A stretch of DNA of 64,000 nucleotides from IMG/VR virus record IMGVR_UViG_3300047472_000309, positions 62,001 to 126,000 of that record. One strand, given 5' to 3'. The first letter of the stretch is position 1, and each line of letters begins with the position of its first letter. Shown one piece after another: positions 35,390 to 52,679 of this stretch. The notes below the pieces were generated by a model. That model was not told where the DNA came from, did no database searches, and worked only from the letters and a program-made list of their open reading frames with translations. The translations under genes and the position numbers were made by a program.

Positions 35390-38254
35390 ATGTCCAAAGC
35401 GTTGAAGGAAGCCATTGCGCTTGCTGGCAGTGGCAAACGCTACTCGGCGATGTCCCTGGTTCGTCAAGACCCAGGCATGGCCGCCACCATCAGCAAGATG
35501 GTCCATGGCAAAACGCCTCCCCGGTACGACAGCTCTGGAAACATGACGACGGACAATCCGTCGATCCAGGCATTGAAGAACGTCTCGGATAATACGGTTC
35601 AAAACATCTCGGACGCACAGACTGTGCTCCAGACGTTGCCTGAACTCGAACTGGCGATCCAGATCCTCGTGTCCTCGGTACTTTCACCGAAAGACATGAT
35701 GACCGTGGAGCTGACATATAAAGCTCCGGAGAACCTGGTCCCGCCGGAAGTGAACACGGCAATGACCAATCGTGTTCGCGTCCATTTTGAACAGAACTAT
35801 AAAATAAAGCAGGTCCTTCCTCGGATGCTGCGTGACGTTCTGGCTGAGACGGGCTCGTATCCGGTCGCGGTGATTCCCGAGAACTCGATTGACGATGTGA
35901 TCAACTCCAATCGTAAAGTGTCGATGGAGTCGCTCGTCGAGCACTTTCACAACGATGGTCGGATTAAGCCGCTGGGTCTGCTCGGTCCGGTCACCAAGAC
36001 CAAGCCCACGCAAGTGCGTCAGGGTGCCGCACTCTCGATGGAGTCGCTCGAGACGTTCAAGTTCGACACGACCTATCGCACCGATGTGACGCTTGAGAAA
36101 GCGTTCGATAACGTCGCGCAGGAAACCTATACGACGGTGACCGATAACCCGTCGTTGCTCAAGGTGCCAATGCTGCACCAGAAGATCCGCGAAAGCCGGG
36201 TGATGGATCTGTTGGGTGCCCGTAACGGTCTGTCGCGCGGGATGAAGCTGGCGAGCGAAGCGTACGGCGCGCAGAACCCGACGCATCAGGTGCAACAGCA
36301 TAAGCCCAATGACCGGGAACTGGCGGGGATGATCTATCGGGATCGCAACTACCAGTACAAACCGATCACTACGCTGAAAACCCAAGAGCAGCTTAATCGC
36401 CGCACGGTGGGTGCGCCGCTCATCATGCACTTGCCCTCGGAAGCGGTGATTCCGGTGTTTGTGCCGGGTAACGTTGAGCAGCACGTGGGCTTCTTCATTC
36501 TGATCGATGAAGACGGTCACCCGATCCAGCGTATTGCCGACATCGATTACTACCAGCAACTGAACGCGCGGATGAATTCCGGTGGTTCGTTCCCTTCGGC
36601 CATGCTGCAAAAGGTCAAGGCGAACATGCAGGGGTTCGATAACACCAATAACGCCCACCTCGATTACTCGGCACGCGTGTACGGTGAAATGATCGAGCAG
36701 GATCTGCTCGCTCGCCTGCGTAATGGCGTGTACGGCAACGGCGTGGCACTGGCTAAGCGCGAAGAAGTGTACCGCATCATGTTTGCACGAGCGCTCGCTA
36801 AGCAACACACGCAGCTGCTCTTCATGCCGATCGAGTTCATGACGTACTTCGCGCTGCGCTATAACGGCGACGGCATGGGTAAGTCGATGCTCGATGACTT
36901 GAAGATCATCAATTCGCTGCGCTCGATGCTCTTGTTTGCCAACGTGATGGCGGCCGTCAAGAACTCGATGGGTCGCACCGAGGTCAAGATCAAGATGGAT
37001 GAGCACGATCCTGATCCGCAGAAGACCTTTGAGCGCGTGGTGCATGAAATCTTGCGCAGCCGTCAGCAAGCATTCCCGGTGGGCACCAACTCGCCGATGG
37101 ACATCGTTGACTGGGTGCAGCGTGCGGGCTTTGAGTTTGTACCGGAAGGTCATCCTGGACTCCCGGACATGACGGTGGAGTTTGGGGAAAAGAACACCAG
37201 CTACGTGAAGCCTGATACGGAGCTCGATGATGATCTGCGTAAGCGCTCGATCATGGGCCTGGGTCTTACGCCGCAGTCCGTTGATGCGGCCTTCGAAGCG
37301 GAGTTCGCCACCTCGGTCCTGACTAACAACATCCTCTTGTCCAAGCGGGTGATGAACATTCAAGAAGTGATTGAGCCGCAACTGGCCGATCACGTGCGTA
37401 AGGTCATGATGAACGATGAAGAGCTCGTTCGTGATCTGCGGGCGATTCTGGAGGCGAGCGCCGATAAGCTGCTTGAGCGCTTGAAGAAGCAAGACGAGGC
37501 CCATAAGGACGATCCGACGTACCGCTCGCATCTGGGCGGTCAGCCGAAGGAATTGGTGATTCAGCAGCTCCTGTACGACTTTGTGATGGGCCTGGAAGTC
37601 AGCCTGCCGAAGCCGAACAGCGTGACGCTGGAGAACCAGCTGGCGGCAATGGATACGTACTCGAAGTCGCTCGATCAGGGGCTCGACTACTACATCTCGA
37701 CGAACTTCCTCACGTCCGACACCGCGGGCGATCTCGGTAACTACGCGGGTTCGCTCAAGGAGATGGCCAAGGCCTACTTCATGCGTAAGTGGATGGGTGA
37801 GAATGGCGTGCTGCCGGAGCTCTCCGATCTGAACACGCTCGACGATGACGGCAAGCCGAAGCTCAACCTGTGGGACGCGTTCCAGGATCACACCAGCAAC
37901 ATGATCCTGAGCATGGACCACTTCATGAACGGCATGAAGCCGATCAAGGATGCAGCGGGGCTAAACAACGCCAAGCGTCAAGCAACCGACCAGAACAGCG
38001 GTGGGATGGGAGGCGGGATGGGTGACATGGGTGGCGGCAGCATGGGTGGCGGCATGTCCATGGGTGGTGACACCGGTTTGGGTGGGTTGGGTGGCGGTGA
38101 TGACTTTGGGGGCGGTGGTTTCAACATGGGTGGTGCAGGGGGCGGTGACGATCCCTTTAACCTCGGTGGCGGAGCCAGCACGACCGATGAGTCGCCTTTG
38201 AATCCGGAAGATGACAAGCCGGAAGATCAGGGTGCTGCAGAACCGCAAGTCTAA
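35390..38254 (+). CDS. Portal protein (phiKZ gp129-like)
   Basis: 954 aa; LPELELAIQILVSSVLSP..., LPSEAVIPV, SMES processing sites; synteny with phiKZ-like genomes. Confidence 0.75.
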   Translation: MSKALKEAIALAGSGKRYSAMSLVRQDPGMAATISKMVHGKTPPRYDSSGNMTTDNPSIQALKNVSDNTVQNISDAQTVLQTLPELELAIQILVSSVLSPKDMMTVELTYKAPENLVPPEVNTAMTNRVRVHFEQNYKIKQVLPRMLRDVLAETGSYPVAVIPENSIDDVINSNRKVSMESLVEHFHNDGRIKPLGLLGPVTKTKPTQVRQGAALSMESLETFKFDTTYRTDVTLEKAFDNVAQETYTTVTDNPSLLKVPMLHQKIRESRVMDLLGARNGLSRGMKLASEAYGAQNPTHQVQQHKPNDRELAGMIYRDRNYQYKPITTLKTQEQLNRRTVGAPLIMHLPSEAVIPVFVPGNVEQHVGFFILIDEDGHPIQRIADIDYYQQLNARMNSGGSFPSAMLQKVKANMQGFDNTNNAHLDYSARVYGEMIEQDLLARLRNGVYGNGVALAKREEVYRIMFARALAKQHTQLLFMPIEFMTYFALRYNGDGMGKSMLDDLKIINSLRSMLLFANVMAAVKNSMGRTEVKIKMDEHDPDPQKTFERVVHEILRSRQQAFPVGTNSPMDIVDWVQRAGFEFVPEGHPGLPDMTVEFGEKNTSYVKPDTELDDDLRKRSIMGLGLTPQSVDAAFEAEFATSVLTNNILLSKRVMNIQEVIEPQLADHVRKVMMNDEELVRDLRAILEASADKLLERLKKQDEAHKDDPTYRSHLGGQPKELVIQQLLYDFVMGLEVSLPKPNSVTLENQLAAMDTYSKSLDQGLDYYISTNFLTSDTAGDLGNYAGSLKEMAKAYFMRKWMGENGVLPELSDLNTLDDDGKPKLNLWDAFQDHTSNMILSMDHFMNGMKPIKDAAGLNNAKRQATDQNSGGMGGGMGDMGGGSMGGGMSMGGDTGLGGLGGGDDFGGGGFNMGGAGGGDDPFNLGGGASTTDESPLNPEDDKPEDQGAAEPQV

Positions 38255-38270
38255 GACCAAAAAAAAAGAG

Positions 38271-38310
38271 CGTCATAAGCCCCCAGGCTTTCGCCTGGGG
38301 GTCTATGCCG
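38271..38310. terminator. Bidirectional CGTCATA-hairpin-TATGCCG element
   Basis: cgtcataag cccccaggc tttc gcctggggg tc tatgccg. Confidence 0.8.
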
Positions 38311-38373: not shown

Positions 38374-39843
38374 TTAATCACCCGTCTTAGGCAAATCCAC
38401 CTGTCCGTTGTTGTTTACATCGGCGACCCTGGTCAGGTTCTGTGACAGCATCATCTCTTCGGCTTGAAGCAACGCCTCCGCTGGTTTGCAGATGGTCATC
38501 CCACGGCGGGAATCCGGGTAGCTCTTCCACACGTCGAGATCAGCGATGCGTTCCATCTGATCTTTCAACACCGGATCAGCAGGCGAAGCTATGGGTGCAA
38601 CACCGCCCGGCCACAGTCCTGCGTCGTCGATGTGCATGACGGAGCGGCTCATCCCACGTGGTTGCTTGACAACCGTATCGCCTTGAGCCTGTTCGAAGAT
38701 GGTGTCGACTTCTTGTTGGGTCTGGAGCATTTCGGCTTCTATCTTCCAGCGCACCCCGCACTGCTCATCGAACACCAGATCGACTGGGAGGTTCGAATAG
38801 TCCAACGCCAAGTGGCCGCCGAGGTGAGCCGTACGAATGAACGGACGTGCGCGTACCAGCATCTGATTACGCGTTTCACCGGTGAGCGGATGGATCTGCA
38901 TCTGGTACTTGAAACCCGACTCCAGTTCGCCATTGTGATCCCCGTTATCTTGCCCCAGCGGATGACCCAGGACAGTACCACCGAACTCTGCAGGCCACCC
39001 TCCTTCAGGCCTGAAAACACGCGCATCGGTGGCCCGCACCGCGAAGTGGTTCTTGGTGATGTCTTCCAAGGTTTCCAGGATCGGTGAAGACTCCCGGACT
39101 TGTTGGCTCGTCATGGTCAGCAACGCATCCCCACCGGCTGAAGCCAGCGCACCATGGGTTTTCCGATCGAAGAGTGGTGTGCCAATGCGCAGTTCATCGT
39201 CTTTAGCAGCTTCTGCCAACCCCAGGAAGCTCTGCACGCTTCGATCCGCGTAATCATCCCCCTTCAGGCGAGCTTCAGCTTCCGCGATCATTTCGTCACG
39301 CGTCTTGTGCGGCAACAATGCAGCGCTCGCGTTCAGGGCGTTGGGATTAGCTTGCCGAGCTTGCTCCAGAATTTCCCTGGTGCTGGGGCGCAAACGCAAC
39401 TTTGCTGGCAGCTTGGCTGAACCGAGCCCGTAATGGCGCTCCATGACCTCGGCAGTTGAGAAGCCATGCGGTTCATCAGTCATCGGTTGCCCCCGACCCA
39501 TTTCGTAGTCAATGTGCTCCTGGTTGGAGAATATCGGCGTGTACTGGTCCGGCTTGGCTTTCCAGCGACGTGGGTTTTCGGACACGCCTTCTGCGATGAA
39601 GGGCCGTGGCGTGTTGCGCTCGACGAACACAAACTCAGTGTCCTTCCAGAAGTTGTGAGCGACGGCCTCTTCGATGATGCGCCGCCCTTCAGCTTCTTCG
39701 AACTGAATACCACTGTCGTTGAGGAAGGTGATCTGGGCGTCTTCGATGCCGTTCTGCTTGAGGAAGTCAGCGAAGGCAAATGCCAGCAGCGTCTTGCCTG
39801 TGCCGCAGAAACCATCGATGGTGATACGGATTTCCTTTTTCAT
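38374..39843 (-). CDS. Hypothetical protein with a short N-terminal P-loop domain
   Basis: ITIDGFCGTGKT Walker A at the extreme N-terminus; AGGAG RBS. Confidence 0.6.
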   Translation of the reverse strand: MKKEIRITIDGFCGTGKTLLAFAFADFLKQNGIEDAQITFLNDSGIQFEEAEGRRIIEEAVAHNFWKDTEFVFVERNTPRPFIAEGVSENPRRWKAKPDQYTPIFSNQEHIDYEMGRGQPMTDEPHGFSTAEVMERHYGLGSAKLPAKLRLRPSTREILEQARQANPNALNASAALLPHKTRDEMIAEAEARLKGDDYADRSVQSFLGLAEAAKDDELRIGTPLFDRKTHGALASAGGDALLTMTSQQVRESSPILETLEDITKNHFAVRATDARVFRPEGGWPAEFGGTVLGHPLGQDNGDHNGELESGFKYQMQIHPLTGETRNQMLVRARPFIRTAHLGGHLALDYSNLPVDLVFDEQCGVRWKIEAEMLQTQQEVDTIFEQAQGDTVVKQPRGMSRSVMHIDDAGLWPGGVAPIASPADPVLKDQMERIADLDVWKSYPDSRRGMTICKPAEALLQAEEMMLSQNLTRVADVNNNGQVDLPKTGD

Positions 39844-39866: not shown

Positions 39867-40382
39867 TTAAGCGGTGGCGTGCTCGATCTCTTGCAACAAG
39901 GCGCGGTCCCCGAGGCGAAAGCCCGCGTTGATGATAAGACCTAGCACGCTGTTGGGCGTCGGTTCCCCCACGCCGTCGAGCCAGCGCTGATACTCGGCGG
40001 CCCCTTCGGTGTATTCTTGCGTGAGCTCGCCGTAGCCGAGCCAGCTAATCATGTCCGCCAGGGCACGCTCCTGTTCCCGCGCACGATTGTAAAAACGCGG
40101 GGCGTACTCTTGCGAGGCCGAGCGCATAAAGCGCACTTCAAAGAAGCCCGTGAACTGCCGCGCCCGGATACGCACCTCGCGTTCAGCGGCTTCGCTGCCC
40201 GAGGTTGCGCCGAAGCGAATTTCCATATCACCCCATCCCGTCGAGGCATACAGCTTTTCCTTTACCGTGCCCAAGGGGAAGACCTTCTTCGAGATGATCT
40301 GGGAGTTCAAAGCCTCGATCAGCTTGACACCGAATTCGTTACCGGCATTGGTGAAATCAAAGAGTTCCATGTTTTTATTCAA
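39867..40382 (-). CDS. Hypothetical protein, 171 aa
   Basis: ORF in a co-directional cluster. Confidence 0.65.
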   Translation of the reverse strand: MNKNMELFDFTNAGNEFGVKLIEALNSQIISKKVFPLGTVKEKLYASTGWGDMEIRFGATSGSEAAEREVRIRARQFTGFFEVRFMRSASQEYAPRFYNRAREQERALADMISWLGYGELTQEYTEGAAEYQRWLDGVGEPTPNSVLGLIINAGFRLGDRALLQEIEHATA

Positions 40383-40446
40383 CTAAGACATAAGCGTTAT
40401 AAGTAGCGAGGAAGCCGTAGCCTCCTCGCCGGTAAGAAAAGCAGGG

Positions 40447-40860
40447 TTACAGCGCGCGGGCTGGTTCGACAATACAGCCGTCGAGGACCAGCGCTTCTTC
40501 AGCCGTGATGCCTTCCTGACCGATCGCACCCAGTGAAAGCGGGCGTGGTTCGGACAAAAAGCCCATGCCGTCGGTGTTGATCTCAGCCACGTTGGCATTT
40601 TCCCGACTGACCACCGTGACCGGTGCATCAAACAACTGCGGATTCGCATCCCGCATGGCGTCAAGCAGCGTGTCAGGCTGCTCGTCTATCCCTTGGGTGC
40701 TGGTCCAGGCTCTAAAGCCAGGCGTATCGGCCTGAATGTTGGCCACGGTGACATTATTAAAGCCATACGTGTCCTTCAGTGCTTGACCAATTGCCCGACC
40801 CACAAGCTCCGCAGCCTTGCCATCGGGGCTTTCCACCACGATGTTCACAGGTGCGTCCAT
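40447..40860 (-). CDS. Paralogue 1 of the GF.NV / LLD.M..NP.LF family
   Basis: GGAGG RBS; motifs shared with neighbouring genes. Confidence 0.8.
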   Translation of the reverse strand: MDAPVNIVVESPDGKAAELVGRAIGQALKDTYGFNNVTVANIQADTPGFRAWTSTQGIDEQPDTLLDAMRDANPQLFDAPVTVVSRENANVAEINTDGMGFLSEPRPLSLGAIGQEGITAEEALVLDGCIVEPARAL

Positions 40861-40872
40861 TTTCCCTCCCTT

Positions 40873-41241
40873 TTAATCGCGTTCGTTCACCTCGTCACGA
40901 TCCAGTTCGAGCGCGACTTCCAGATCCGCCGCTTCGTTGGGTGGCAGATCCATCTCCACTTCGAGCTCCGGCTCCAGACACGCACTCACCACTTCGATAC
41001 GACGATGGAAGAGCGCCGGATTGGCGTCTGCCATCGCATCGAGCAACGACTTACCTTGCTCGAAGTCCGTTTGCGGGTCACCCACGGCTTCGCTACTCAC
41101 ATCCGCATGATGAGTAACGGTGACGTTGGTGAAGCCGACGTTCTGGATCGCGTGTCCCACCACCTTACCGAGCGCCAGCGCGAGTTCGTTGTTATCCGAC
41201 TCGATGACTACGCTGGCAACCGCGTCTTCTTGCTGTTCCAT
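40873..41241 (-). CDS. Paralogue 2 of the GF.NV / LLD.M..NP.LF family
   Basis: AGGAGG RBS; shared motifs. Confidence 0.8.
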   Translation of the reverse strand: MEQQEDAVASVVIESDNNELALALGKVVGHAIQNVGFTNVTVTHHADVSSEAVGDPQTDFEQGKSLLDAMADANPALFHRRIEVVSACLEPELEVEMDLPPNEAADLEVALELDRDEVNERD

Positions 41242-41271
41242 GTCCTTCCTCCTTGTTTTTACTGCGTCATT

Positions 41272-41685
41272 TTACTGCACGATGACCGTAGCTGCTTCGG
41301 GCTTGCTCACCCGGATCGCATCGTTCAGACCTGCGCCGTCGCCGAGTTCTTCCTTGGCGTCTTCAATCATGTCCGTGACGAGATCCAGTGCTGCACTGCC
41401 GCCCGCGGTGGCAATGACGGCGATGGGTGCATCGAAGAGCTGCGGGTTTAGGGCCTTCATCGAGCCGAGGAGCGTGTCCGCGTTCGAGAGGTCCACATCC
41501 ACACGCGTCGGATCGTCGCTCTTGTCGACATGGATCGCCACGTTGGTGAAACCTGCGTCCGAGAGGCCTTTATTGACCGCGACGGCAATCGCCTGTCGCT
41601 GGCTGATGTTGTCTGACGCGATGATGACACCCGCACCGCTGTCATTCTTGGTTACGTCGTTCATAATGCGAGCAAATTCCTTCAT
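41272..41685 (-). CDS. Paralogue 3 of the GF.NV / LLD.M..NP.LF family
   Basis: Shared motifs. Confidence 0.8.
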   Translation of the reverse strand: MKEFARIMNDVTKNDSGAGVIIASDNISQRQAIAVAVNKGLSDAGFTNVAIHVDKSDDPTRVDVDLSNADTLLGSMKALNPQLFDAPIAVIATAGGSAALDLVTDMIEDAKEELGDGAGLNDAIRVSKPEAATVIVQ

Positions 41686-41716
41686 GATACCGTTCCTGTT
41701 CGTGATGGGTTTTTTG

Positions 41717-42154
41717 TTAGACGAGAACTTCGTCGAGTAGCACTGCTTTTGGTGCTACAAACGTGGCGAGGTCAATGATCGTGCCATCTTTCAGACGACC
41801 TTGACCGGGCTGGAGTTCGGGCGCATCGCCCGAGAGTTCTGTCATGTCGATGTGGTCAGCCATCGTGCTCAGATGGGGCTCGGTAGCTTCCACAGGGTTC
41901 TCGCTATAGGGCATAGCGAGGATGCTCACTGGCCGCGCGAACAGTCGCGGGTTCAGCGCACGCATCTCATCAAGCAGGCTCGGAAGCGCGGAGCGTTCGA
42001 TCACCTTGCTTGTTTCGTCGTCGCGGCTGGCGATGCCAGTGTCGACATGGGTGAACCCCGATTCCTGCAGTTTGTCTTGGATCAGACTTGCCACCAGCTG
42101 CCGGGTCTGTGCGCCCTGTGCTTCGATGATGACATTGATTGCGTCAGGAGTCAT
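41717..42154 (-). CDS. Paralogue 4 of the GF.NV / LLD.M..NP.LF family
   Basis: AAGGA RBS before ATG 42154; shared motifs. Confidence 0.8.
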   Translation of the reverse strand: MTPDAINVIIEAQGAQTRQLVASLIQDKLQESGFTHVDTGIASRDDETSKVIERSALPSLLDEMRALNPRLFARPVSILAMPYSENPVEATEPHLSTMADHIDMTELSGDAPELQPGQGRLKDGTIIDLATFVAPKAVLLDEVLV

Positions 42155-42173
42155 GCCTAATCGTTCCTTGAAG

Positions 42174-42217
42174 GGCTCATAAGACGGAGGGGCCGAAGGC
42201 ACCCTCCATCTCATGCT
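42174..42217 (-). terminator. Variant hairpin + TATGAGC element
   Basis: ggagggtgccttcggcccctcc gtct tatgagc on the minus strand. Confidence 0.5.
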
Positions 42218-42232
42218 CAGTCGTCGTAAGTT

Positions 42233-42637
42233 TTACTTCTGCTGCGAGGGACCCACATGCGCCCAGATCGTGTTAGCGGCAATGAGAAGCTCTTCTTCGA
42301 TTGCCTCGACAAAGAGTTCTTCGGTTTTACCATCGTGCAGCCACAGATCAAAGAATCGCCCTGTACCCGGTTCATCATCCCGATAGTACTCCCTCATCGA
42401 CACGTACGGGACCTGTTGGCCCATCCGGGTTAAGTCAATGAAGTAGAACTGGGTGTGTGCGTGACTGTCTTCTGACTCGCACACGTACATGGTTTTCAGC
42501 TGAATGCTCGGATATGCCGAGCGCACTGCTAACAGCTTAGCCTGCAGAATTCCCATGATGGCGTAGCCGAACGGATTCGGTACGTTATCAGCCATCGGAA
42601 CGGTTTCAGGAAGGGCAGGTTTCTTACGGGCGCTCAT
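42233..42637 (-). CDS. Hypothetical protein, 134 aa
   Basis: ORF with GGAG RBS. Confidence 0.65.
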   Translation of the reverse strand: MSARKKPALPETVPMADNVPNPFGYAIMGILQAKLLAVRSAYPSIQLKTMYVCESEDSHAHTQFYFIDLTRMGQQVPYVSMREYYRDDEPGTGRFFDLWLHDGKTEELFVEAIEEELLIAANTIWAHVGPSQQK

Positions 42638-42643
42638 TAATGC

Positions 42644-43804
42644 TTACTCCGTGGTCTGGAACTTACGAGCCCGATGCAGTTCGATGGAGAATGCCTCGGG
42701 GTTCTTTTCGATCTCAGCCCACGTGGTGTGGTCGGGCACAATCGCGGGCAAGGTGAGATTCACACGATGTGAGTCCCCATCGACTAAGAACATACCGATG
42801 GCGCCTGCCCACTGTCCCACGTACACCTGTGGGATCTTTTCAAAGCGCGCAATGCTACTGAGCTTAAGGAGCTCGCCCGCTTGCCCGAAGAATTCCACGT
42901 TCACCCAGCCCGGTTGTAGGTCGAACCCTTCCTCGATCACGACCTTCCACTTAGGCTTACCGTCCGGTGGGTCCAGATACACCGTAGTGGTGCCGTAGGC
43001 GCTCTCAGTGGGCTCGCAGACGTCAGCGGCATAGCCGGTACAGTCGTAGGCGCCGACGACGCCCTTGACCAGCAGCGCCAGCCCACGACCGGCTGAGCAG
43101 GCGTCCTCCATTTCGAACTGGTAAGACACTTGCGGCTGCAACTCGAGCCAGTCTGCATCCATCCAGAAACCGATCGGCTCGGCTTGCGTGAAATACGCCA
43201 CCAGCGAGGTGACAAATTCGTCTGCTTCCAGATCGAGCTGATGGCCCTTGCGATCGAGCACGGCCGACACATGCACAGGCGTAAGCTGGACAACACGCAG
43301 ATTACCGCTCTTGATATTGAGCGTACCTGAGAGCTCCATCTCCAATCGCACATACATCTCTTCAGCCATCATGCGCTGCAGAATCGGCGGTCGCGACTCG
43401 ACCGTAGTCCAGGTCGCCAGCTCCGTGAGACCGATCACAAACGGAATGCGCTTGTTTTCGATCGCCAGTTGACAGAAGTCCGTTTGCGAAGCGGGCACGA
43501 ACCGGGCATCCGCCACATTCAACCCGATGGCCGAAGTCACCACCTTTTCACAATCGGGCAGCTTGAACACCACGCCGTACAGGCGCGGGTTCGTCGGATC
43601 AATCCCCCAGCTCGGGCGAATCACTTCTTGCGCGACAAGCTCTTCACTACGTGCCAATCCCGTGAAGGGGATGTTCACGTTAAAGCGCAACGCCGACGTG
43701 TAGACCGTGATGTGCGAGGTGAGGGCTTCTGCTTCGCCGAGATTGTACTGATCATCGACAAAGTGGTAACGGTTAAAGGGGGTATGCAGCGGTAGGATTT
43801 TCAT
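42644..43804 (-). CDS. Hypothetical protein, 386 aa
   Basis: ORF with purine-rich RBS. Confidence 0.7.
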   Translation of the reverse strand: MKILPLHTPFNRYHFVDDQYNLGEAEALTSHITVYTSALRFNVNIPFTGLARSEELVAQEVIRPSWGIDPTNPRLYGVVFKLPDCEKVVTSAIGLNVADARFVPASQTDFCQLAIENKRIPFVIGLTELATWTTVESRPPILQRMMAEEMYVRLEMELSGTLNIKSGNLRVVQLTPVHVSAVLDRKGHQLDLEADEFVTSLVAYFTQAEPIGFWMDADWLELQPQVSYQFEMEDACSAGRGLALLVKGVVGAYDCTGYAADVCEPTESAYGTTTVYLDPPDGKPKWKVVIEEGFDLQPGWVNVEFFGQAGELLKLSSIARFEKIPQVYVGQWAGAIGMFLVDGDSHRVNLTLPAIVPDHTTWAEIEKNPEAFSIELHRARKFQTTE

Positions 43805-43841
43805 TTTCTTTTCCCTGTCTTTTTAACCTGTACTGACTGCG

Positions 43842-44234
43842 CTAAAAACGGATGGTGGTCATGCCACCCTGAATCTCGATGGCCTTGATGGGACCATCGG
43901 GCGGGCTTGGATTGGTGATCCGGTTCCAGGCCGCCTCATTGGGGATGTCTGGTTCAAACGCTTGCCGGGCAGTTTCCACCGTAATTGCGGTGGTAAAGAT
44001 TTCGGGGTTAAGCAGCTGACACTCTTCCAAGAGCGTGGTCACGTTCTCGGACGGCATCTGCTCCTTGTGATCCGGAATGTAATCGACGTGCTGAAAGCCT
44101 GCGCCTTCCAGGGCACCAAAGACCACCTCTTTGGCGACCCAACGGGCGCGCTCTGTGCCACCGGTGATGACGATACTCATCGCATCCTCACCCACATCCA
44201 GCGGGCCCACCAGGTCCATGTTCAGCTGTGCCAT
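43842..44234 (-). CDS. Paralogue 5 of the GF.NV / LLD.M..NP.LF family (divergent)
   Basis: GAGFQHV...TLLEECQLLNPEIF. Confidence 0.7.
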   Translation of the reverse strand: MAQLNMDLVGPLDVGEDAMSIVITGGTERARWVAKEVVFGALEGAGFQHVDYIPDHKEQMPSENVTTLLEECQLLNPEIFTTAITVETARQAFEPDIPNEAAWNRITNPSPPDGPIKAIEIQGGMTTIRF

Positions 44235-44235
44235 G

Positions 44236-44616
44236 TTAACTCTCCCAGGAGTCGGTTGCTAGATAGAGATAAAAGCGGATCAGGTAGTCGGGAATGGTCT
44301 CTGCATTCACCCACAGCTCCGCCACTTCGATGTCGTCATTGCGGGCACCGACGACGTGACGCATCACCTTCACCCGTGCCATGCGCAAACCTTCGCGCTC
44401 CATCACACTTAAGTAACCTTTCAGCTCCAGCGGTTCTTGCCCGACGAGCTCGCCGATGAGGAGCTCAGTATGGTGCTCGCGGGTCTCATCGTCATCCTTA
44501 CGGGTCACAAGGACTTTCGTGAGCGAGTTCTTTATTTTGTAGCCGGTCAGCGCCTGACGAAATACCACGTACTGCGCGATCAGCTCCGCAAAGGGACGAT
44601 TGCTTTCTACGGTCAC
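44236..44616 (-). CDS. Hypothetical protein, 126 aa
   Basis: GTG start with AGGAG RBS. Confidence 0.65.
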   Translation of the reverse strand: MTVESNRPFAELIAQYVVFRQALTGYKIKNSLTKVLVTRKDDDETREHHTELLIGELVGQEPLELKGYLSVMEREGLRMARVKVMRHVVGARNDDIEVAELWVNAETIPDYLIRFYLYLATDSWES

Positions 44617-44638: not shown

Positions 44639-44683
44639 GGGCATAAACCGAGACAAGGAAAAAAATCCTTGTCTCGTTATGAG
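44639..44683. terminator. GGGCATA-hairpin-TATGAG element
   Basis: gggcataaac cgagacaagga aaaaaa tccttgtctcg t tatgag. Confidence 0.65.
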
Positions 44684-44773: not shown

Positions 44774-44816
44774 CAAAAAAGAAAGGCCTGGGGATCACTC
44801 CCCAGGCGCTATGCCG
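44774..44816. terminator. Hairpin with a U-tract on the minus strand and TATGCCG on the plus strand
   Basis: aaaaaagaaag gcctgggga tcac tccccaggc gc tatgccg. Confidence 0.7.
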
Positions 44817-44824
44817 CCGAATCC

Positions 44825-46897
44825 TTAACGGATCTTGCGGATCAGGTACGCATCACTGCCGAGGTAGCCCGTGGTGACTTCGAGGATGTGGTCATCTGCC
44901 GTACGGATGAAATGCCGGTAGAAGTTATCGTCGACGCCGCTCGTGGCTTGGAAGATGCTTTCCGCCAAGTTGTACAGCTCCGGCATGTCGCTGGTGATCA
45001 ACGACGCGATCCGGTCCTTCGGATCGAGTTCGAGTTCCAGCTCCACGGCCGCCGCGCTCAGATACGTGAACGTGTAGTTCGAGGTGAGGTACGTGAGTTT
45101 GGGCGGATGTTCCGGCGAATAATCGCGATCCATCAGGAGATTGTCCGTGAGGGCCGCTTCATCGTCCGGGTGCGAAAACTCCGCAAACGCTGCACGAATG
45201 TTCTTCGTCTGGTTGCCCAGGAAGACCACCGAGAACGTTTCGCCGTACCACTTCTCGATCACGCCCGGCAGATCCGCCACATCGGCCGCGAAATCATGGA
45301 TGCGGATGTCGCCGATGGAGAGCGACTGCGCGAGCACGCGGTTGATCATCTCGGTGAGCTTGCGATTGATGGCTGCATAGAGCGGGCCATTCATCACGCC
45401 TTCGACCGATTTCATCATTTCCGCGAGTTCTGCGTAGCTCTTCGCTTGCGCGAACGATTGCAATGCCCCGCTTTCGTCCTTCAGCGACACAAAGGGCTCA
45501 GCCACTTGCGCACGGATGCGATACACATCCGGCACTTGCTCGCTGTCCTTCGTCACGGCCATGCACTTGAGCGTACCTTGCAGCCACGCCAGATCCAGCG
45601 TCGGCTCCAACACCCACGTGTCTTCCACCACCTGCACGAGCGGCTTCTTCGGCGGTGCTTCGCCCGCCTCCCCATCGCCGACCTTCTCGGTCAGTTCCTT
45701 CACCCCGGCCGCAATACGCGTGAGCGTCTGGGCCGATTTGTTGGTATCGATGTACTTCGGCACGCTGCCGAATGTAGTTGGGAGGCGATGCTTTTCACGG
45801 TCCATCGAAGAGTCCGTCCTTTCTTTCACGAGTTGGATGACAGTGCCGTCGGCCTGCTTTTGCAGATACAACAGACTGGTACGAGGGTTATACGCCAATG
45901 CATACGGCTGACGCACCGACGGCTTCCACACCAGTTTGGTGGAGTCGATATGCTCCGGCTCGTTACCAGCCGGTTTCGTTTCCACCTGCGTTGCAGGCTT
46001 GGCTGCGGGTGCGGACTCACTCCGTTCGCTTGGCGGTACCCAGGACGTCTTCACGTTCGGCACGGAAGGTCCTTGGTTGTCACCCGGCTTCTTGTCGAAA
46101 CGGCTTGTGTTAAAGCTGCCGCTTTCCTGGGCGGGTTCGCCATACTGCACACCCCCGGAGAACAGGCCCGACGTTCCACCTTGGTTCAGAGAACCGGCAA
46201 ACTGCCGCGCAGGAGGACGTTGTTGATTCCAGCCACCGCCCCCCTGGTTGCCCCAGCGCGACTGTTGCTGCTGGTTCCCCCACTGTTGGCCACCACCGGA
46301 GTTGCCCCACTGACGTGCGCCACCCCACTGATTGCCACCGCCTTGATTGCCCCAACCCGCACCTTGACCACCCTGCGGCGCGCCGCCTTGCATCATCTGC
46401 GCGTAAACGGGACTGTTCTTGAACGCATTGATTTCGTTCTGGATGTCGTTTGCCATCTGAACGAGACCGGTGATATGCGCCTGCATCTGTGGCGGCACCC
46501 CTTGTTGCAGCTCCGCGTACTGCACCACTTGGTTTGCCACATACATCTCGACCATCTTCGGGATCAGCGCCTGCGCACCTTGCTCCGGATTCTGGAACTT
46601 GTTGCTCGCCAACCCGAGCAGGACCCAGTCGACGACACCCATCACGAGACCTGCGAACACCTCGTTTTGGTAGCCGTTACGGGACACCACGTTGTACGCC
46701 ATCGTCCGCGGCGGACTATTGGGCGCATTGGTTTGAAAATCGAGCGCGACCGCCGCCGAAATCACCGGTATCAAGTCTGCCATGAACCCCGGATACGGAA
46801 ACTGCGGGACACAGGGCGGATTGTTGATGGCGATAGGCAGTGGAGCGCGTTCTGGATTGTAAGGGTCCGCAGGCAGACCCGCATTTGACATAACCAT
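44825..46897 (-). CDS. Large hypothetical protein with a central Q/G/N/W low-complexity region
   Basis: 690 aa; AGGAAAGG RBS; directly downstream of the nvRNAP subunit gene. Confidence 0.75.
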   Translation of the reverse strand: MVMSNAGLPADPYNPERAPLPIAINNPPCVPQFPYPGFMADLIPVISAAVALDFQTNAPNSPPRTMAYNVVSRNGYQNEVFAGLVMGVVDWVLLGLASNKFQNPEQGAQALIPKMVEMYVANQVVQYAELQQGVPPQMQAHITGLVQMANDIQNEINAFKNSPVYAQMMQGGAPQGGQGAGWGNQGGGNQWGGARQWGNSGGGQQWGNQQQQSRWGNQGGGGWNQQRPPARQFAGSLNQGGTSGLFSGGVQYGEPAQESGSFNTSRFDKKPGDNQGPSVPNVKTSWVPPSERSESAPAAKPATQVETKPAGNEPEHIDSTKLVWKPSVRQPYALAYNPRTSLLYLQKQADGTVIQLVKERTDSSMDREKHRLPTTFGSVPKYIDTNKSAQTLTRIAAGVKELTEKVGDGEAGEAPPKKPLVQVVEDTWVLEPTLDLAWLQGTLKCMAVTKDSEQVPDVYRIRAQVAEPFVSLKDESGALQSFAQAKSYAELAEMMKSVEGVMNGPLYAAINRKLTEMINRVLAQSLSIGDIRIHDFAADVADLPGVIEKWYGETFSVVFLGNQTKNIRAAFAEFSHPDDEAALTDNLLMDRDYSPEHPPKLTYLTSNYTFTYLSAAAVELELELDPKDRIASLITSDMPELYNLAESIFQATSGVDDNFYRHFIRTADDHILEVTTGYLGSDAYLIRKIR

Positions 46898-46952
46898 GGC
46901 TTGTTTCCTTTCCTTGTTTTTTGCTTACACTCGATACGTCTACCGAGCGCTT

Positions 46953-48653
46953 TTAGTGAGACGCACTGAATTGACGGACCCGACTACCGTAGGGTTTCAG
47001 CTTGACCTGGGTGGAGTCCAGCAACTCAATGAGAGCCGGGTCGCGCAGCACGACACCCTTGGAGTCCGTATGCAGATGCGGATTCAAGCGTGCATGCCCG
47101 GAAGGATCACTCTTGGGCAGATTCGCATACCCGCCGACTTCACACACCGAAATGTGGATCTTCTTCGTCGGGTCACTGATTGCCGCGTTGTCCTTCCGCC
47201 CCGTTTGGCGACTGGAGCTCGTTTGCGGCACCAACTGGGCGGTCGTTTTGAACGCCTTGTTGTCGCCAGGACACGAAATCGTCGAGACCTCACCGTGCTT
47301 CTTGGTGATCGAGTACACCAGACCGGTCCGCAGCGTCTGGTTCATCATGGTCGTGATTTCTTTCGTGTTCAGTTCTTTCTTCGAAGCCGCCTTCAGCTTG
47401 AAGTAGAACTTGTTGATTTGCTTGGTGATTTCGTCGAGCACGTAATACAGCACCGACAATTCCTTGTCGTACATGCTACTGACGTGATCCCGCGCCGCGA
47501 GAATCCAGTCCTGGAAGTTCTCGAGCACAATACCGAAGAGCTGGTAAATGTCCTCGATCGGCATCCCGATGTCGCGGAACTTGATCTTCATCACCTCATC
47601 GATGTACTCATCCAGGCTACGGATGTGCTCAGCGATGTCGTCCTCCAGCTTACCTTCGGTGATGTTGCTGGAGAACAGCAGATGACCCATCAGAATCATC
47701 CACAAGGCACGCTCCCGAGGCTTGGGTGCATCGATCGTGCCCAGATACTTCGGCTGGACGCGGCTCGGGAAGTGATCGACGATGTAGAAGAACCCACACA
47801 CCAGGTTTTTGACCATCGGCGTGTAATCCTCCCGGCGGATAGCCAGGCGTATCGTCGTCGGCGTATACTGCTTAAGCGTATACGTGCGCGCAGGCCGCGT
47901 GTGGGTGTTGGTCTTCACGATCACCCAGTCGCTTGGCGGATACTCCGCTTCGCTAATGGTGCTCGCATCCCCCACGATCGGCACGGTGCCGCCGAAGCGC
48001 TGGAACATTTCCGCAAATCCATACTTACACAGCAAGTAGTGAACGAGCGTGGTGTTCGCTTTGATGACCGGCTTAAGCTTTTGCATCTTCTGGTTCTTGT
48101 TGTACACCAAGGACCAGGCCACGTGAACTGTCTCACGGAAATCCCGCCCCGTGACATCGTTCGCGAGATAATGCTGCTGCTCGCGCTGGAACGTCAGCTT
48201 CGCGCGGATGAGCTTCACGAAGATGGAATCCTCCCCCTTCGAGATTACTCGGTCGGCCAAAATCGGCGAGATCACAAAGCGTGAGCCGCCGAGATAAATC
48301 ACCCCAGCATCGGACACAAACGGGAGATACATGTACCGCTTGATTTCCTCCGTCTTACCGTTCTTGTCGGTATGGCGAAAGATGTACTTCATCATGTAAA
48401 TGTCCGACCTGGCCACATCGAACATCCGTTTGTTGTTCTTCTTCCGAGTTGCCTCGTCGAATTCCTCTTGTGGGGTACAGCGCTCTCCTCTCACATAGGT
48501 GAAGCCATCCGGAAAGCCTTTAGCCACGGCTCGGAATACCGAGTCAACCCAGCCTTCAGCTTCCTGCATGTGCTTCTGTGCCAAGCCGCCCGCCAAATCC
48601 GGATTCAATTTGGGGGTGTGTTGATCAATTAGCCGAGAAAGTTCGCGGTCCAT
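46953..48653 (-). CDS. Non-virion RNA polymerase beta-like subunit, N-terminal piece (phiKZ gp123-like)
   Basis: YLPFV..AG.IYLGGSRFVISPIL.D matches the RpoB N-terminal region; C-terminal IHIS..EVG....PKSDPSG..RLNP. Confidence 0.85.
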   Translation of the reverse strand: MDRELSRLIDQHTPKLNPDLAGGLAQKHMQEAEGWVDSVFRAVAKGFPDGFTYVRGERCTPQEEFDEATRKKNNKRMFDVARSDIYMMKYIFRHTDKNGKTEEIKRYMYLPFVSDAGVIYLGGSRFVISPILADRVISKGEDSIFVKLIRAKLTFQREQQHYLANDVTGRDFRETVHVAWSLVYNKNQKMQKLKPVIKANTTLVHYLLCKYGFAEMFQRFGGTVPIVGDASTISEAEYPPSDWVIVKTNTHTRPARTYTLKQYTPTTIRLAIRREDYTPMVKNLVCGFFYIVDHFPSRVQPKYLGTIDAPKPRERALWMILMGHLLFSSNITEGKLEDDIAEHIRSLDEYIDEVMKIKFRDIGMPIEDIYQLFGIVLENFQDWILAARDHVSSMYDKELSVLYYVLDEITKQINKFYFKLKAASKKELNTKEITTMMNQTLRTGLVYSITKKHGEVSTISCPGDNKAFKTTAQLVPQTSSSRQTGRKDNAAISDPTKKIHISVCEVGGYANLPKSDPSGHARLNPHLHTDSKGVVLRDPALIELLDSTQVKLKPYGSRVRQFSASH

Positions 48654-49992: not shown

Positions 49993-50331
49993 CGGCATAA
50001 TAGCCGAGGCTTGCGCCTCGGCGTCTATGACGGCATAAAACACCCAGCGAGGGTAGCTGGTTAGGCTACCCCCACCTTCGGAGACATCAAGGAGTTCCGT
50101 TGCCAGTTCCCCTCAATAGATATCCTAACGCAGTAAGGAATTACGGCCAGCAGTTTTGACGCCATCGACTCACCTTCTGAAGGGCAGGCAAGAACGGCAT
50201 AAAGCCCAAGGTTTCCCTCGGGCCTCATGTTTGCAAACGGTGCTGCCCATGTTCCCATGGGTGTTGTGCCTGGCCATGTAACCATAGACAGCATAAATAG
50301 ACCTCGCCCAGGACTCCCTGGGCGAGACCTA
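49993..50331 (-). terminator. Four tandem hairpin-TATGC(C/T)G elements downstream of the major capsid gene
   Basis: cggcata at 49993, 50031 and 50195 and cagcata at 50289, each adjacent to a GC-rich hairpin. Confidence 0.7.
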
Positions 50332-52630: not shown

Positions 52631-52679
52631 CTTTTGTTTCCCTTGAGTTAAACGAAGTTGCTATTGGGGCTGAAACCGT

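What the first reader, a model, noticed from the sequence alone, without database searches (positions are those of the whole stretch)
40447..44234. Array of five small acidic paralogues of an unrecognised family
Seen: ORFs at 40447, 40873, 41272, 41717 (tandem) and 43842 share the pattern beta-strand (V/I-I/V-I/V-E/A/T), helix, GF(T/N/Q)(N/H)V, variable loop, (T/S)LL(D/G/E)xMxxxNPxLF, beta-strand. Examples: TLLDAMRDANPQLFDAPV, SLLDAMADANPALF, TLLGSMKALNPQLFDAPI, SLLDEMRALNPRLF, TLLEECQLLNPEIF. Each has a divergent, mostly acidic tail, and most have a strong RBS. Inference: an expanded and diversified family in an accessory region downstream of an early-type operon. Candidates are decoys or inhibitors of host defence proteins, or subunits of a hetero-oligomer.
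Basis: partly seen in the sequence, partly recalled or inferred. Interest (0 to 1): 0.7.

Follow-up and report, generated by a model that had tools for sequence, protein, structure and literature searches.

The report
Five dimer-forming P-loop-remnant phage paralogues
A nucleus-forming jumbo phage carries five conserved copies of a small, uncharacterised acidic protein whose core looks like a dead remnant of a nucleotide-binding (P-loop) domain and is predicted to fold only as an intertwined dimer. Each copy has its own conserved tail motif, so the set looks like adaptor proteins rather than early anti-defence decoys.

Summary
All five ORFs lie on the minus strand and are significant paralogues: pairwise BLASTP E 1e-14 to 4e-3, and leave-one-out HMM E 1e-15 to 2e-8 among 1,827 genome ORFs. 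They are under purifying selection.

They belong to a wide family with no Pfam model: 183 clusters at 50% identity. In this work it was found only in a subset of phiKZ-like jumbo phages.

The window comes from a 310,654-bp chimallin-encoding phage of a rhizosphere metagenome. Its nearest isolate is Burkholderia phage FLC9. The same five genes, in the same order, occur in FLC9 and in two metagenomic relatives.

The array fills the slot between the phiKZ gp124 and gp128/gp129 homologues. It lies in a 10-gene operon behind a hairpin+TTTATGCC (TATG-type) promoter-like element, not the early-type CCTATATTAC motif that precedes chimallin.

The ~90-residue β-α-β-α-β core carries a degenerate Walker A position. 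Nine of 121 relatives keep GxxxxGK[ST]; none of these five does.

AlphaFold monomers leave the strands unpaired. A two-chain model of p3+p4 cores gives an intertwined dimer: ipSAE 0.64, best control 0.01.

Each paralogue's tail has its own conserved motif. My best reading is non-enzymatic dimeric adaptors. The function itself is untested.

The parts
40447..40860 (-). p1, 137 aa. Core residues ~1-97; its strand 1 is followed by SPDGKAAE, a partial GK remnant where relatives carry Walker A. The tail carries the motif G-[IV]-T-[AF]-E-E, conserved in its orthologue group.
40873..41241 (-). p2, 122 aa, net charge -22. The tail motif L-P-P-x-E-A-A-x-[LM] is conserved in its orthologues.
41272..41685 (-). 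p3, 137 aa. The core has dN/dS 0.018. The tail is a conserved amphipathic stretch, A-x-D-[LF]-[VI]-x-D-x-I-x-D-A.
41717..42154 (-). p4, most likely 145 aa from the ATG at 42154; the open frame runs up to 42214. The tail motif Q-P-G-Q-G-R-L-x-D-G-T-I-I-D-L-A-T is shared with several orthologues.
43842..44234 (-). p5, 130 aa, separated from p1-p4 by two genes. Its conserved tail has A-W-x-R and a C-terminal hydrophobic-x-I-[RH]-F end.
38374..39843 (-). 489-aa last gene of the operon. Its N-terminus (IRITIDGFCGTGKT...GIEDAQITF) has a true Walker A and is weakly related to the family core.
   Evidence: ResIII, E 0.058; E 0.026; hhalign E 3e-4, probability 40%
44639..44675 (-). GC-rich hairpin followed by GGTTTATGCCC, about 30 nt upstream of the first gene of the operon (126 aa). 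This is a promoter-like TATG-type element, conserved at the same place in FLC9, L022 and L024.
42174..42207 (-). A second hairpin plus TCTTATGAGCC, about 30 nt upstream of p4's likely start.
40387..40430 (-). A third hairpin plus TATAACGCTTATG, between p1 and the 171-aa gene.
44775..44807 (-). Intrinsic-terminator-like hairpin with a T-run after the 690-aa gp124 homologue. It marks the upstream edge of the operon.
38266..38284 (-). Terminator-like hairpin after the 489-aa gene. It marks the downstream edge of the operon.
44236..44616 (-). 126-aa first gene of the operon. It is not a family member (hhalign E 0.48).
42644..43804 (-). 386-aa gene inside the array with a partial major-capsid-protein (PhiKZ_MCP) match.
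42233..42637 (-). 134-aa gene of unknown function between the 386-aa gene and p4. It is 69-86% identical in the three relatives.
39867..40382 (-). 171-aa gene of unknown function between p1 and the 489-aa gene.

Best explanation
The five genes encode paralogues of an uncharacterised family found here only in a subset of phiKZ-like jumbo phages. Each has a core of about 90 residues (strand-helix-strand-helix-strand). The core descends from the Walker-A (P-loop) unit of a nucleotide-kinase-like NTPase, and the phosphate-binding loop is destroyed in all five.

The core is predicted not to fold on its own. It forms an intertwined dimer in which strand 3 of one chain lies between strands 1 and 2 of the other, giving one six-stranded sheet. 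The paralogues therefore most likely exist as homo- and/or heterodimers.

Behind the common core, each paralogue carries a different acidic tail with its own conserved short motif. The genes are co-transcribed from TATG-type (non-early, non-virion-RNA-polymerase-type) promoters, in an operon between the gp124 and portal homologues of a chimallin-encoding phage.

Most likely mechanism (inferred, not shown): they are non-enzymatic dimeric adaptors or chaperones. The core supplies pairing, and each tail motif binds or masks a different phage or host partner during the middle or late phase of infection.
For: Shown:
- Paralogy and family.
- 1:1 orthologues in the same order in FLC9, L022 and L024, with orthologue clades supported at 92-100% bootstrap for p2-p5 (p1's clade is only partly resolved).
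- Arrays of 4-5 members at the same locus in distant phages L002 and L004.
- Purifying selection, stronger on the core (dN/dS 0.02-0.21) than on the tail (0.11-0.41).
- The array is intact and without indels in three rhizosphere samples.

P-loop descent:
- 9 of 121 relatives have GxxxxGK[ST] exactly between strand 1 and helix 1. The family consensus there is G-x4-(G)-[RK].
- Weak but consistent profile hits to P-loop kinases and a designed phosphate-loop protein (1q3t, 1y63, 3lv8, 4tmk, 5cb6, 6c2u; E 0.04-1).
- Weak Pfam AAA_18, AAA and NAT10-helicase hits in single members.
- ESM-Atlas shape neighbours include the N-terminal parts of MeaB, AddB and UvrD.

Dimer:
- Two AlphaFold monomer models (pLDDT 75 and 79) have confident helices but no paired strand.
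- The p3+p4 core complex scores ipSAE 0.64 against a best control of 0.01. That mark was reached by 58 of 80 solved complexes and 2 of 110 mismatched pairs. The runs share at least 87% of contacts and the partner's pLDDT is at least 70. The contacts are strand3'-strand1, strand3'-strand2 and strand1-strand1'.

Tails: motifs specific to each orthologue group.

Timing:
- Hairpin+TTTATGCC elements are enriched about 14-fold upstream of genes.
- They precede DNA polymerase, dCTP deaminase and virion genes, and also this operon.
- CCTATATTAC precedes chimallin.
- TATG is the phiKZ late-promoter consensus read by the non-virion RNA polymerase: PMC4666361.
Against: - No experiment, transcript or proteome exists for this phage. 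Only DNA runs hold it.
- The P-loop link rests on sub-threshold matches and on a minority of members. No curated P-loop model reaches its cut-off.
- The dimer is a model made with my own unpaired alignment. A paralogue may score as the true partner's close cousin, so hetero- and homodimers cannot be told apart.
- No fold match was found for either monomer model.
- No partner of any tail is known. The 'adaptor' role is inferred from architecture alone.
- The promoter class is inferred from motifs, and the TATG-type class here drives both replication and virion genes.
Confidence: 0.45

Rival explanations
1. Subunits of one hetero-oligomeric machine. The five small paralogues, possibly with the 132-aa sixth member, assemble in fixed stoichiometry. 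They may do so around the 489-aa protein, which keeps an intact Walker A in a related N-terminal domain, and would act as its inactive regulatory or structural partners.
For: - All are in one operon, each with its own ribosome-binding site.
- The five-member set and its order are fixed across four phages.
- The core-core complex model passes.
- The 489-aa N-terminus aligns to the family core, with GFCGTGKT at the loop position.
Against: - Many phages carry a single member and no 489-like gene: L047, L048, RP12. The core function therefore does not need five partners.
- The relation of the 489-aa N-terminus is weak (probability 40%).
- The model cannot separate homo- from hetero-pairing.
- Five distinct conserved tail motifs are not explained by a purely structural role.
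Confidence: 0.2
2. Head-assembly or packaged internal proteins. The acidic paralogues would be scaffold-like or internal-body-like components that enter the prohead. They would be lost or processed at maturation, or ejected with the DNA.
For: - They lie between the major-capsid and portal homologues, with a truncated capsid-protein paralogue inside the array.
- The TATG-type promoter class also drives virion genes.
- There is a weak profile hit to the N-terminal part of phiKZ inner-body protein gp93 (E 0.003).
Against: - The immediate conserved neighbours, the gp123 RNA-polymerase subunit and gp124, are not marked structural in the phiKZ record.
- In RP12, RP31 and FLC1-1B the family members sit beside dihydrofolate reductase, DNA ligase and ribonucleotide reductase genes.
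- RP31 ORF181 appears in the paper's supplementary ORF annotation tables but in none of the other supplementary files searched, where the table of 32 virion proteins would be. This is weak evidence, because small proteins are easily missed.
- The gp93 hit is at chance level.
Confidence: 0.15
3. Anti-defence decoys or DNA mimics. The strongly acidic dimers would imitate nucleic acid, or bait host immune proteins, and each paralogue would aim at a different system.
For: - pI 4.0-4.7 and net charge -10 to -22.
- They are small and predicted to be dimeric.
- The family has expanded and is patchily distributed among related phages.
Against: - Not behind the early-type promoter motif.
- Stable 1:1 orthology and dN/dS well below 1.
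- No copy-number variation among strains.
- No sequence match to known families (Pfam and PHROGs were searched; PADLOC and NCBIfam were not).
- Inside a phage nucleus the replicating DNA is already shielded (knowledge from the literature, e.g. as cited).
Confidence: 0.12
4. Still-active small nucleotide-binding proteins. The five would bind or hydrolyse nucleotides as dimers and act in nucleotide metabolism or signalling.
For: - Relatives with an intact Walker A and a conserved Glu after strand 3 exist.
- RP12 and FLC1-1B members sit beside nucleotide-metabolism genes.
Against: - None of the five has GxxxxGK[ST].
- The Glu after strand 3 is not conserved in them.
- The core has only three strands.
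Confidence: 0.05

Closest known systems
P-loop nucleoside/nucleotide-kinase-type NTPases (adenylate, cytidylate, thymidylate and APS kinases), and the designed 'phosphate-loop' prototype proteins (PDB 6c2u)
   Same: - The core begins strand 1, glycine-rich loop, helix 1, G-[FIL]-x-x-[VI] strand 2.
- A minority of family members keep a full Walker A at that loop, and a Glu after strand 3.
- The predicted sheet order strand2-strand3-strand1 matches the 2-3-1 core of that class. The class's strand order is from my own knowledge; the contacts are.
- Like the designed prototypes, the domain is about 100 residues and is predicted to need self-association.
   Different: - Only three strands per chain.
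- Strand 3 is predicted to come from the partner chain.
- The five proteins here lack Walker A.
- No lid or substrate domain is present.
- All sequence matches are below significance (best E 0.04).
PHROG 38013 / Ralstonia phage RP12 ORF184 (UniProt A0A1L7N106) and RP31 ORF181; FLC9 gp82-85 and gp88
   Same: - True homologues: profile E 1e-15 to 1e-24.
- RP12 ORF184 is the only fold-search hit in the viral library.
   Different: - All are annotated only as hypothetical proteins.
- RP12 and RP31 have a single copy in a different genomic neighbourhood.
Cargo-specific nuclear-import factors of phiKZ (Imp2, Imp4, Imp5)
   Same: - Small, lineage-restricted proteins of nucleus-forming phages without predicted enzymatic function, proposed to act as specific adaptors (bioRxiv 10.1101/2024.03.27.586873).
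- This is the kind of role that a set of dimeric cores with different tail motifs could fill.
   Different: - No homology: a profile scan of the whole phiKZ genome finds only a chance-level hit in gp93.
- No localisation or genetic data exist for the family here.
- This is an analogy of role only.
Small acidic dimeric DNA-mimic and anti-restriction proteins (Ocr, ArdA and similar)
   Same: Small, very acidic, dimeric.
   Different: No sequence or fold match. Not early-expressed by promoter class. Conserved hydrophobic alpha/beta core with specific tail motifs rather than a charge-patterned surface.

Membership tests
P-loop NTPase (kinase-like class) | Walker A motif GxxxxGK[ST] between strand 1 and helix 1 | tested here: not met
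   None of p1-p5 has it: p1 SPDGKAAE, p2 SDNNELAL, p3 SDNISQRQ, p4 AQGAQTRQ, p5 GGTERARW. Nine of 121 relatives and the 489-aa neighbour do.
P-loop NTPase (kinase-like class) | Walker B acidic residue at the end of strand 3 | tested here: inconclusive
   A Glu two residues after strand 3 is conserved in the Walker-A-intact subgroup. It is present only in p1 (SRE) and p5 (VET) here.
P-loop NTPase (kinase-like class) | Significant match to a curated P-loop profile or solved P-loop structure | tested here: not met
   Pfam: AAA_18, AAA and NAT10-helicase at E 0.006-0.009 in single members only. PDB profile hits E 0.04-1. Fold searches: Z <= 4, TM <= 0.52.
P-loop NTPase (kinase-like class) | Central parallel sheet of order 2-3-1-4-5 | tested here: inconclusive
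   There are only three strands per chain. The inter-chain contacts of the complex model imply 2-3'-1-1'-3-2'. No coordinates were available to check strand direction.
PHROG 38013 (unknown function) | hmmscan match to the PHROG profile | tested here: not met
   p1-p5 give no PHROG hit at E <= 0.1. Twelve of 121 relatives match, best E 1.3e-19. The link therefore runs through the wider family only.
phiKZ inner-body protein family (gp89, 90, 93, 95, 97, 162) | Sequence homology to an inner-body protein | tested here: not met
   Only one hit: gp93 residues 37-85, E 0.003 per genome, 13.5-15 bits. This is not significant.
phiKZ inner-body protein family (gp89, 90, 93, 95, 97, 162) | Presence in the virion and processing by the prohead protease | not testable with these tools
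   There is no proteome for this phage or FLC9. RP31 ORF181 occurs only in the supplementary ORF annotation tables, not in the other supplementary files searched. [SAG]-x-E motifs are too common in acidic tails to inform.
Early anti-defence / DNA-mimic proteins | Expression from early (virion RNA polymerase) promoters | tested here: not met
   The operon has hairpin+TATG elements. The CCTATATTAC motif that precedes chimallin is absent from 38.3-44.8 kb. This is motif inference, not RNA data.
Early anti-defence / DNA-mimic proteins | Inhibition of a host defence system | not testable with these tools
   This needs expression in strains that carry defence systems.

The most novel reading that the evidence does not exclude
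The family would be a natural 'minimal P-loop'. These are proteins of about 100 residues that complete a nucleotide-binding 2-3-1 sheet only by strand-swapped dimerisation. They would be a natural counterpart of the laboratory-designed phosphate-loop prototypes, still active in the single-copy, Walker-A-intact members (such as P0052 and P0117). In the FLC9-like phages the family has been duplicated into five pseudo-enzymes, whose distinct tail motifs act as cargo- or partner-specific adaptors, for example in sorting proteins between cytoplasm, phage nucleus and capsid.
Probability: 0.15. Interest if true: 0.8.

Novelty: new variant of a known kind. Interest (0 to 1): 0.55.

Why it matters
Nucleus-forming jumbo phages are studied as models of viral compartmentalisation and as therapy and biocontrol agents. 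Most of their small proteins have no known role.

This work defines a family of at least 183 sequence clusters. It has a clear signature, a conserved genomic slot next to the gp124 homologue, a likely evolutionary origin in a degraded P-loop, and a testable structural prediction of an obligate intertwined dimer.

The five-fold, stably inherited expansion, in which each copy has its own tail motif, gives concrete handles for experiments. Motif mutants, pull-downs and localisation can all be done in a cultivable relative, FLC9 on Burkholderia glumae. If the Walker-A-intact members bind nucleotides as dimers, they would also matter for ideas about how the P-loop fold arose.

Tried and rejected
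- Pfam, PHROGs and PDB sequence searches with single proteins and with the 121-row profile gave no significant named family.
- Fold searches of two AlphaFold monomer models gave nothing above background, apart from an RP12 family member and weak shape likeness to N-terminal pieces of P-loop proteins. The libraries were BFVD, AFDB clusters, PDB by Foldseek, PDB by VIA-align wide (twice) and ESM Atlas.
- Protein-atlas feature searches on p3 and on the 489-aa protein were uninformative.
- Megablast of the region against the phage collection gave no match.
- phiKZ gp125 and gp126, and the window's own 126-aa protein, occupy the same slot. I tested them as hidden homologues by hhalign and rejected them (E 0.4-0.6).
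- I considered prohead-protease [SAG]-x-E motifs in the tails and dropped them. About one per tail is expected by chance.
- No RNA run holds this phage, so expression could not be read.
- The mBio 2025 phage S13 paper was checked. It concerns a different, RSL2-like phage.
- Deep orthology between this array and the arrays of L002 and L004 could not be resolved. The deep nodes are weak and there are long branches.

Full report
**1. What is there**

The window is bases 62001-126000 of a single 310,654-bp contig with 56% G+C. It encodes:
- a nuclear-shell (chimallin) protein: phrog_4795, E 1.5e-108;
- a phiKZ-type major capsid protein;
- homologues of phiKZ gp120, gp123, gp124, gp128 and gp129.

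It is therefore a nucleus-forming phiKZ-like jumbo phage. It comes from rhizosphere metagenomes, and only DNA runs hold it. The nearest isolate is Burkholderia phage FLC9, whose capsid protein is 88% identical.

**2. Is the likeness real?**

Yes.
- Pairwise BLASTP E-values range from 1.7e-14 to 4e-3.
- A profile of any four finds the fifth at E 1.2e-15 to 2.4e-8 among 1,827 ORFs of the genome. The best unrelated ORF scores E >= 0.008.
- All five score as coding by a codon-usage model trained on the genome's long genes.
- Against a close metagenomic relative (L022) their dN/dS is 0.06-0.28. The core is more constrained (0.02-0.21) than the tail (0.11-0.41).
- The stretch is contiguous and free of indels in contigs from three rhizosphere samples, one of them with 39 substitutions.
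- p4 most likely starts at the internal ATG at 42154. Its orthologues all start there, and a promoter-like element lies within the longer frame.

**3. The family**

A profile search of 1.84 billion cluster representatives found 183 proteins at E <= 1e-3. Nearly all are 90-170 residues long. The shared core is:
- a hydrophobic strand ending in G, S or A, then a short loop;
- a helix ending A-G-F-x-[ND]-V (strand 2);
- a variable loop;
- [ST]-[LM]-L-D...N-P-x-[LF]-F (helix 2);
- P-[IV]-x-[IV] (strand 3);
- an acidic tail.

No Pfam family matches. Only PHROG 38013, of unknown function, matches 12 of 121 members.

Every source name is 'hypothetical protein'.

**4. Distribution and context**

The same five members, in the same order, occur in FLC9 (gp88, gp85, gp84, gp83, gp82) and in two metagenomic phages (L022, L024). 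The orthologue clades of p2-p5 are supported at 92-100% bootstrap; p1's clade is only partly resolved. The duplications therefore predate that group, and none has been lost.

More distant phages, whose gp123 homologue is 50% identical, differ:
- some have arrays of four or five members at the same locus (L002, L004);
- others have a single member directly after the gp124 homologue (L047, an ENA contig, L048).

FLC1-1B has two copies, near DNA ligase and ribonucleotide reductase genes. RP12 and RP31 have one copy, next to dihydrofolate reductase.

No member was found at E <= 0.01 in PhiPA3, Noxifer, RSF1, AgentSmith, Goslar, SPN3US, Viktualia or FLC8. In phiKZ the only hit is a chance-level one in gp93, E 0.003.

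The own genome holds two further distant relatives:
- a sixth member of 132 aa, outside the window;
- a weakly related N-terminal domain in the 489-aa protein that ends the operon.

**5. Transcription unit and timing**

A strong terminator-like hairpin follows the gp124 homologue (44775-44807), and the next one follows the 489-aa gene (38266-38284). Between them lie ten genes with short gaps: 126 aa, p5, 386 aa, 134 aa, p4, p3, p2, p1, 171 aa and 489 aa.

Two motifs are enriched genome-wide upstream of genes.
- A GC-rich hairpin followed by (C)TTTATGCCG has 34 sites. It precedes DNA polymerase, dCTP deaminase and several virion genes. It also precedes this operon at 44639-44675, with two weaker copies before p4 and before the 171-aa gene. 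The element is kept at the same place in FLC9, L022 and L024.
- CCTATATTAC has 10 sites and precedes chimallin.

In phiKZ, TATG is the consensus of late promoters read by the non-virion polymerase (PMC4666361). That chimallin is an early gene is my own knowledge.

I therefore infer that the array is not an early operon. This rests on motifs, not on RNA.

**6. Origin of the core**

Nine of 121 aligned relatives carry GxxxxGK[ST] exactly between strand 1 and helix 1, and also a conserved Glu after strand 3. The family consensus at that loop is a decayed version, G-x4-(G)-[RK].

Several weak results point the same way:
- The 489-aa neighbour has GFCGTGKT at the same place.
- Profile searches of the PDB return cytidylate, thymidylate, adenylate-like and APS kinases and a designed phosphate-loop protein, all below significance (E 0.04-1).
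- Single members touch the Pfam AAA_18, AAA and NAT10-helicase models at E ~0.007.
- ESM-Atlas shape neighbours include the N-terminal parts of MeaB, AddB and UvrD.

Each line is weak. Together they make descent from a P-loop kinase-like unit the best reading. None of p1-p5 keeps the motif, so I take them as non-catalytic. This is inference.

**7. Fold**

Two AlphaFold2 models have confident helices but no paired strand at all. One is p3 full length (pLDDT 75, pTM 0.52). The other is the p4 core (pLDDT 79, pTM 0.62). They match no known fold.

A two-chain prediction of the p3 and p4 cores supports binding:
- ipSAE 0.64, best of three controls 0.01;
- the mark was reached by 58 of 80 solved complexes and 2 of 110 mismatched pairs, and these counts hold only roughly because my own alignment was used;
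- the runs agree in at least 87% of contacts;
- the partner's pLDDT is at least 70.

The lowest-error contacts join strand 3 of each chain to strands 1 and 2 of the other, and strand 1 to strand 1'. This implies one six-stranded sheet of order 2-3'-1-1'-3-2'. That order would explain why the monomers do not fold. It also reproduces the 2-3-1 core of kinase-type P-loop proteins; the class's strand order is my own knowledge.

The model cannot say whether the natural pairs are homo- or heterodimers. Phages with a single copy imply that homodimers are the ancestral state.

**8. Tails**

The tails are acidic, with net charge -2 to -11, but they are not random. Each orthologue group keeps its own motif:
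- p1: G-[IV]-T-[AF]-E-E;
- p2: L-P-P-x-E-A-A-x-[LM];
- p3: an amphipathic D-[LF]-[VI]-x-D-x-I-x-D-A;
- p4: Q-P-G-Q-G-R-L-x-D-G-T-I-I-D-L-A-T;
- p5: A-W-x-R and a C-terminal I-[RH]-F.

A common pairing core with five different conserved peptides is the architecture of adaptor or chaperone sets.

**9. Explanation and rivals**

I commit to non-enzymatic, dimer-forming adaptors made in the middle or late phase (confidence 0.45 for the whole statement). I am more confident in the family, the operon and the dimer core. I am less confident in the role.

The rivals are:
- one fixed hetero-oligomer, perhaps with the 489-aa Walker-A protein (0.2);
- head-assembly or packaged proteins (0.15);
- anti-defence decoys (0.12);
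- still-active nucleotide binders (0.05).

The evidence for and against each is in the fields above. No tool could test function.

**10. Comparison and novelty**

The family is not a member of any curated family. The defining P-loop features were tested and are not met in these five proteins, so I do not file them as P-loop NTPases, only as likely descendants.

Functionally, the nearest described idea is the lineage-specific, cargo-specific import factors of phiKZ. There is no homology to them.

I rate the finding as a new variant of a known kind, with interest 0.55.

Noticed in passing
window 42644-43804 (-): A 386-aa gene inside the array matches only the middle of the phiKZ major-capsid-protein profile (PF25620 positions 155-360 of 635, E 6e-16; phrog_3231). 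It looks like a truncated capsid-protein paralogue. It is conserved in FLC9, L022 and L024 at 34-79% identity. It could be a vertex or accessory shell protein.
   Followed up: partly
window 44825-46897 (-): The 690-aa homologue of phiKZ gp124 carries a long Gly/Gln/Asn/Trp low-complexity stretch (repeats such as GNQGGG..QW). In distant phages a family member sits directly downstream of this gene. A paper cites phiKZ gp124 as an early-expressed binder of host DnaX/FtsZ (PMC11849849).
   Followed up: partly
window 35390-38254 (+): The 954-aa homologue of phiKZ gp129 (the portal) ends in a Gly/Met/Asp-rich low-complexity tail of about 90 residues.
   Followed up: no
whole genome; in the window e.g. 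44639-44675, 49993-50022, 42174-42207: Two upstream motifs occur genome-wide. A GC hairpin followed by (C)TTTATGCCG has 34 sites, before replication and virion genes. CCTATATTAC has 10 sites, including one before chimallin. They are probably the non-early and early promoter classes of this phage group.
   Followed up: partly
window 38374-39843 (-): A 489-aa protein has a genuine Walker A (GFCGTGKT) in an N-terminal unit weakly related to the family core. The rest of it is large and unmatched. Its homologues in FLC9 (gp81) and L024 are longer, at 568-716 aa.
   Followed up: partly
genome 214501-214899 (-), outside the window (locus L042): A distant sixth family member of 132 aa matches only the first strand-helix-strand (hhalign E 2.9e-5). 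It has an orthologue in FLC9 near 208.2 kb.
   Followed up: partly
window 44888-46888 (+), 50438-52651 (+), 35684-37921 (-), 46896-48284 (+): Very long 'shadow' ORFs of 462-745 aa run antisense to real genes. Their codon-position G+C and their codon-usage scores mark them as non-coding.
   Followed up: yes
L024 3165-3878 and 18603-19220: GIY-YIG/NUMOD3 homing-endonuclease genes are inserted between the gp123 and gp124 homologues and after the gp128 homologue of a related 326-kb phage. They are absent from the window.
   Followed up: no
proteins P0005, P0010, P0037: P0005 is a p3-like core behind an N-terminal winged-helix HTH_39 domain; this is either a real fusion or a merged gene call. P0010 and P0037 are proteins of 2,200-2,400 aa with 7-15 partial matches to the first half of the profile. 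They are probably unrelated repeat proteins, since TALE-like BurrH repeats give similar weak matches.
   Followed up: no
L022 4170-5002: The closest relative has two extra small genes (127 and 142 aa) between the gp124 homologue and the first operon gene. The window has only a 208-bp spacer with the terminator and the promoter-like element there. The two genes are not family members.
   Followed up: partly
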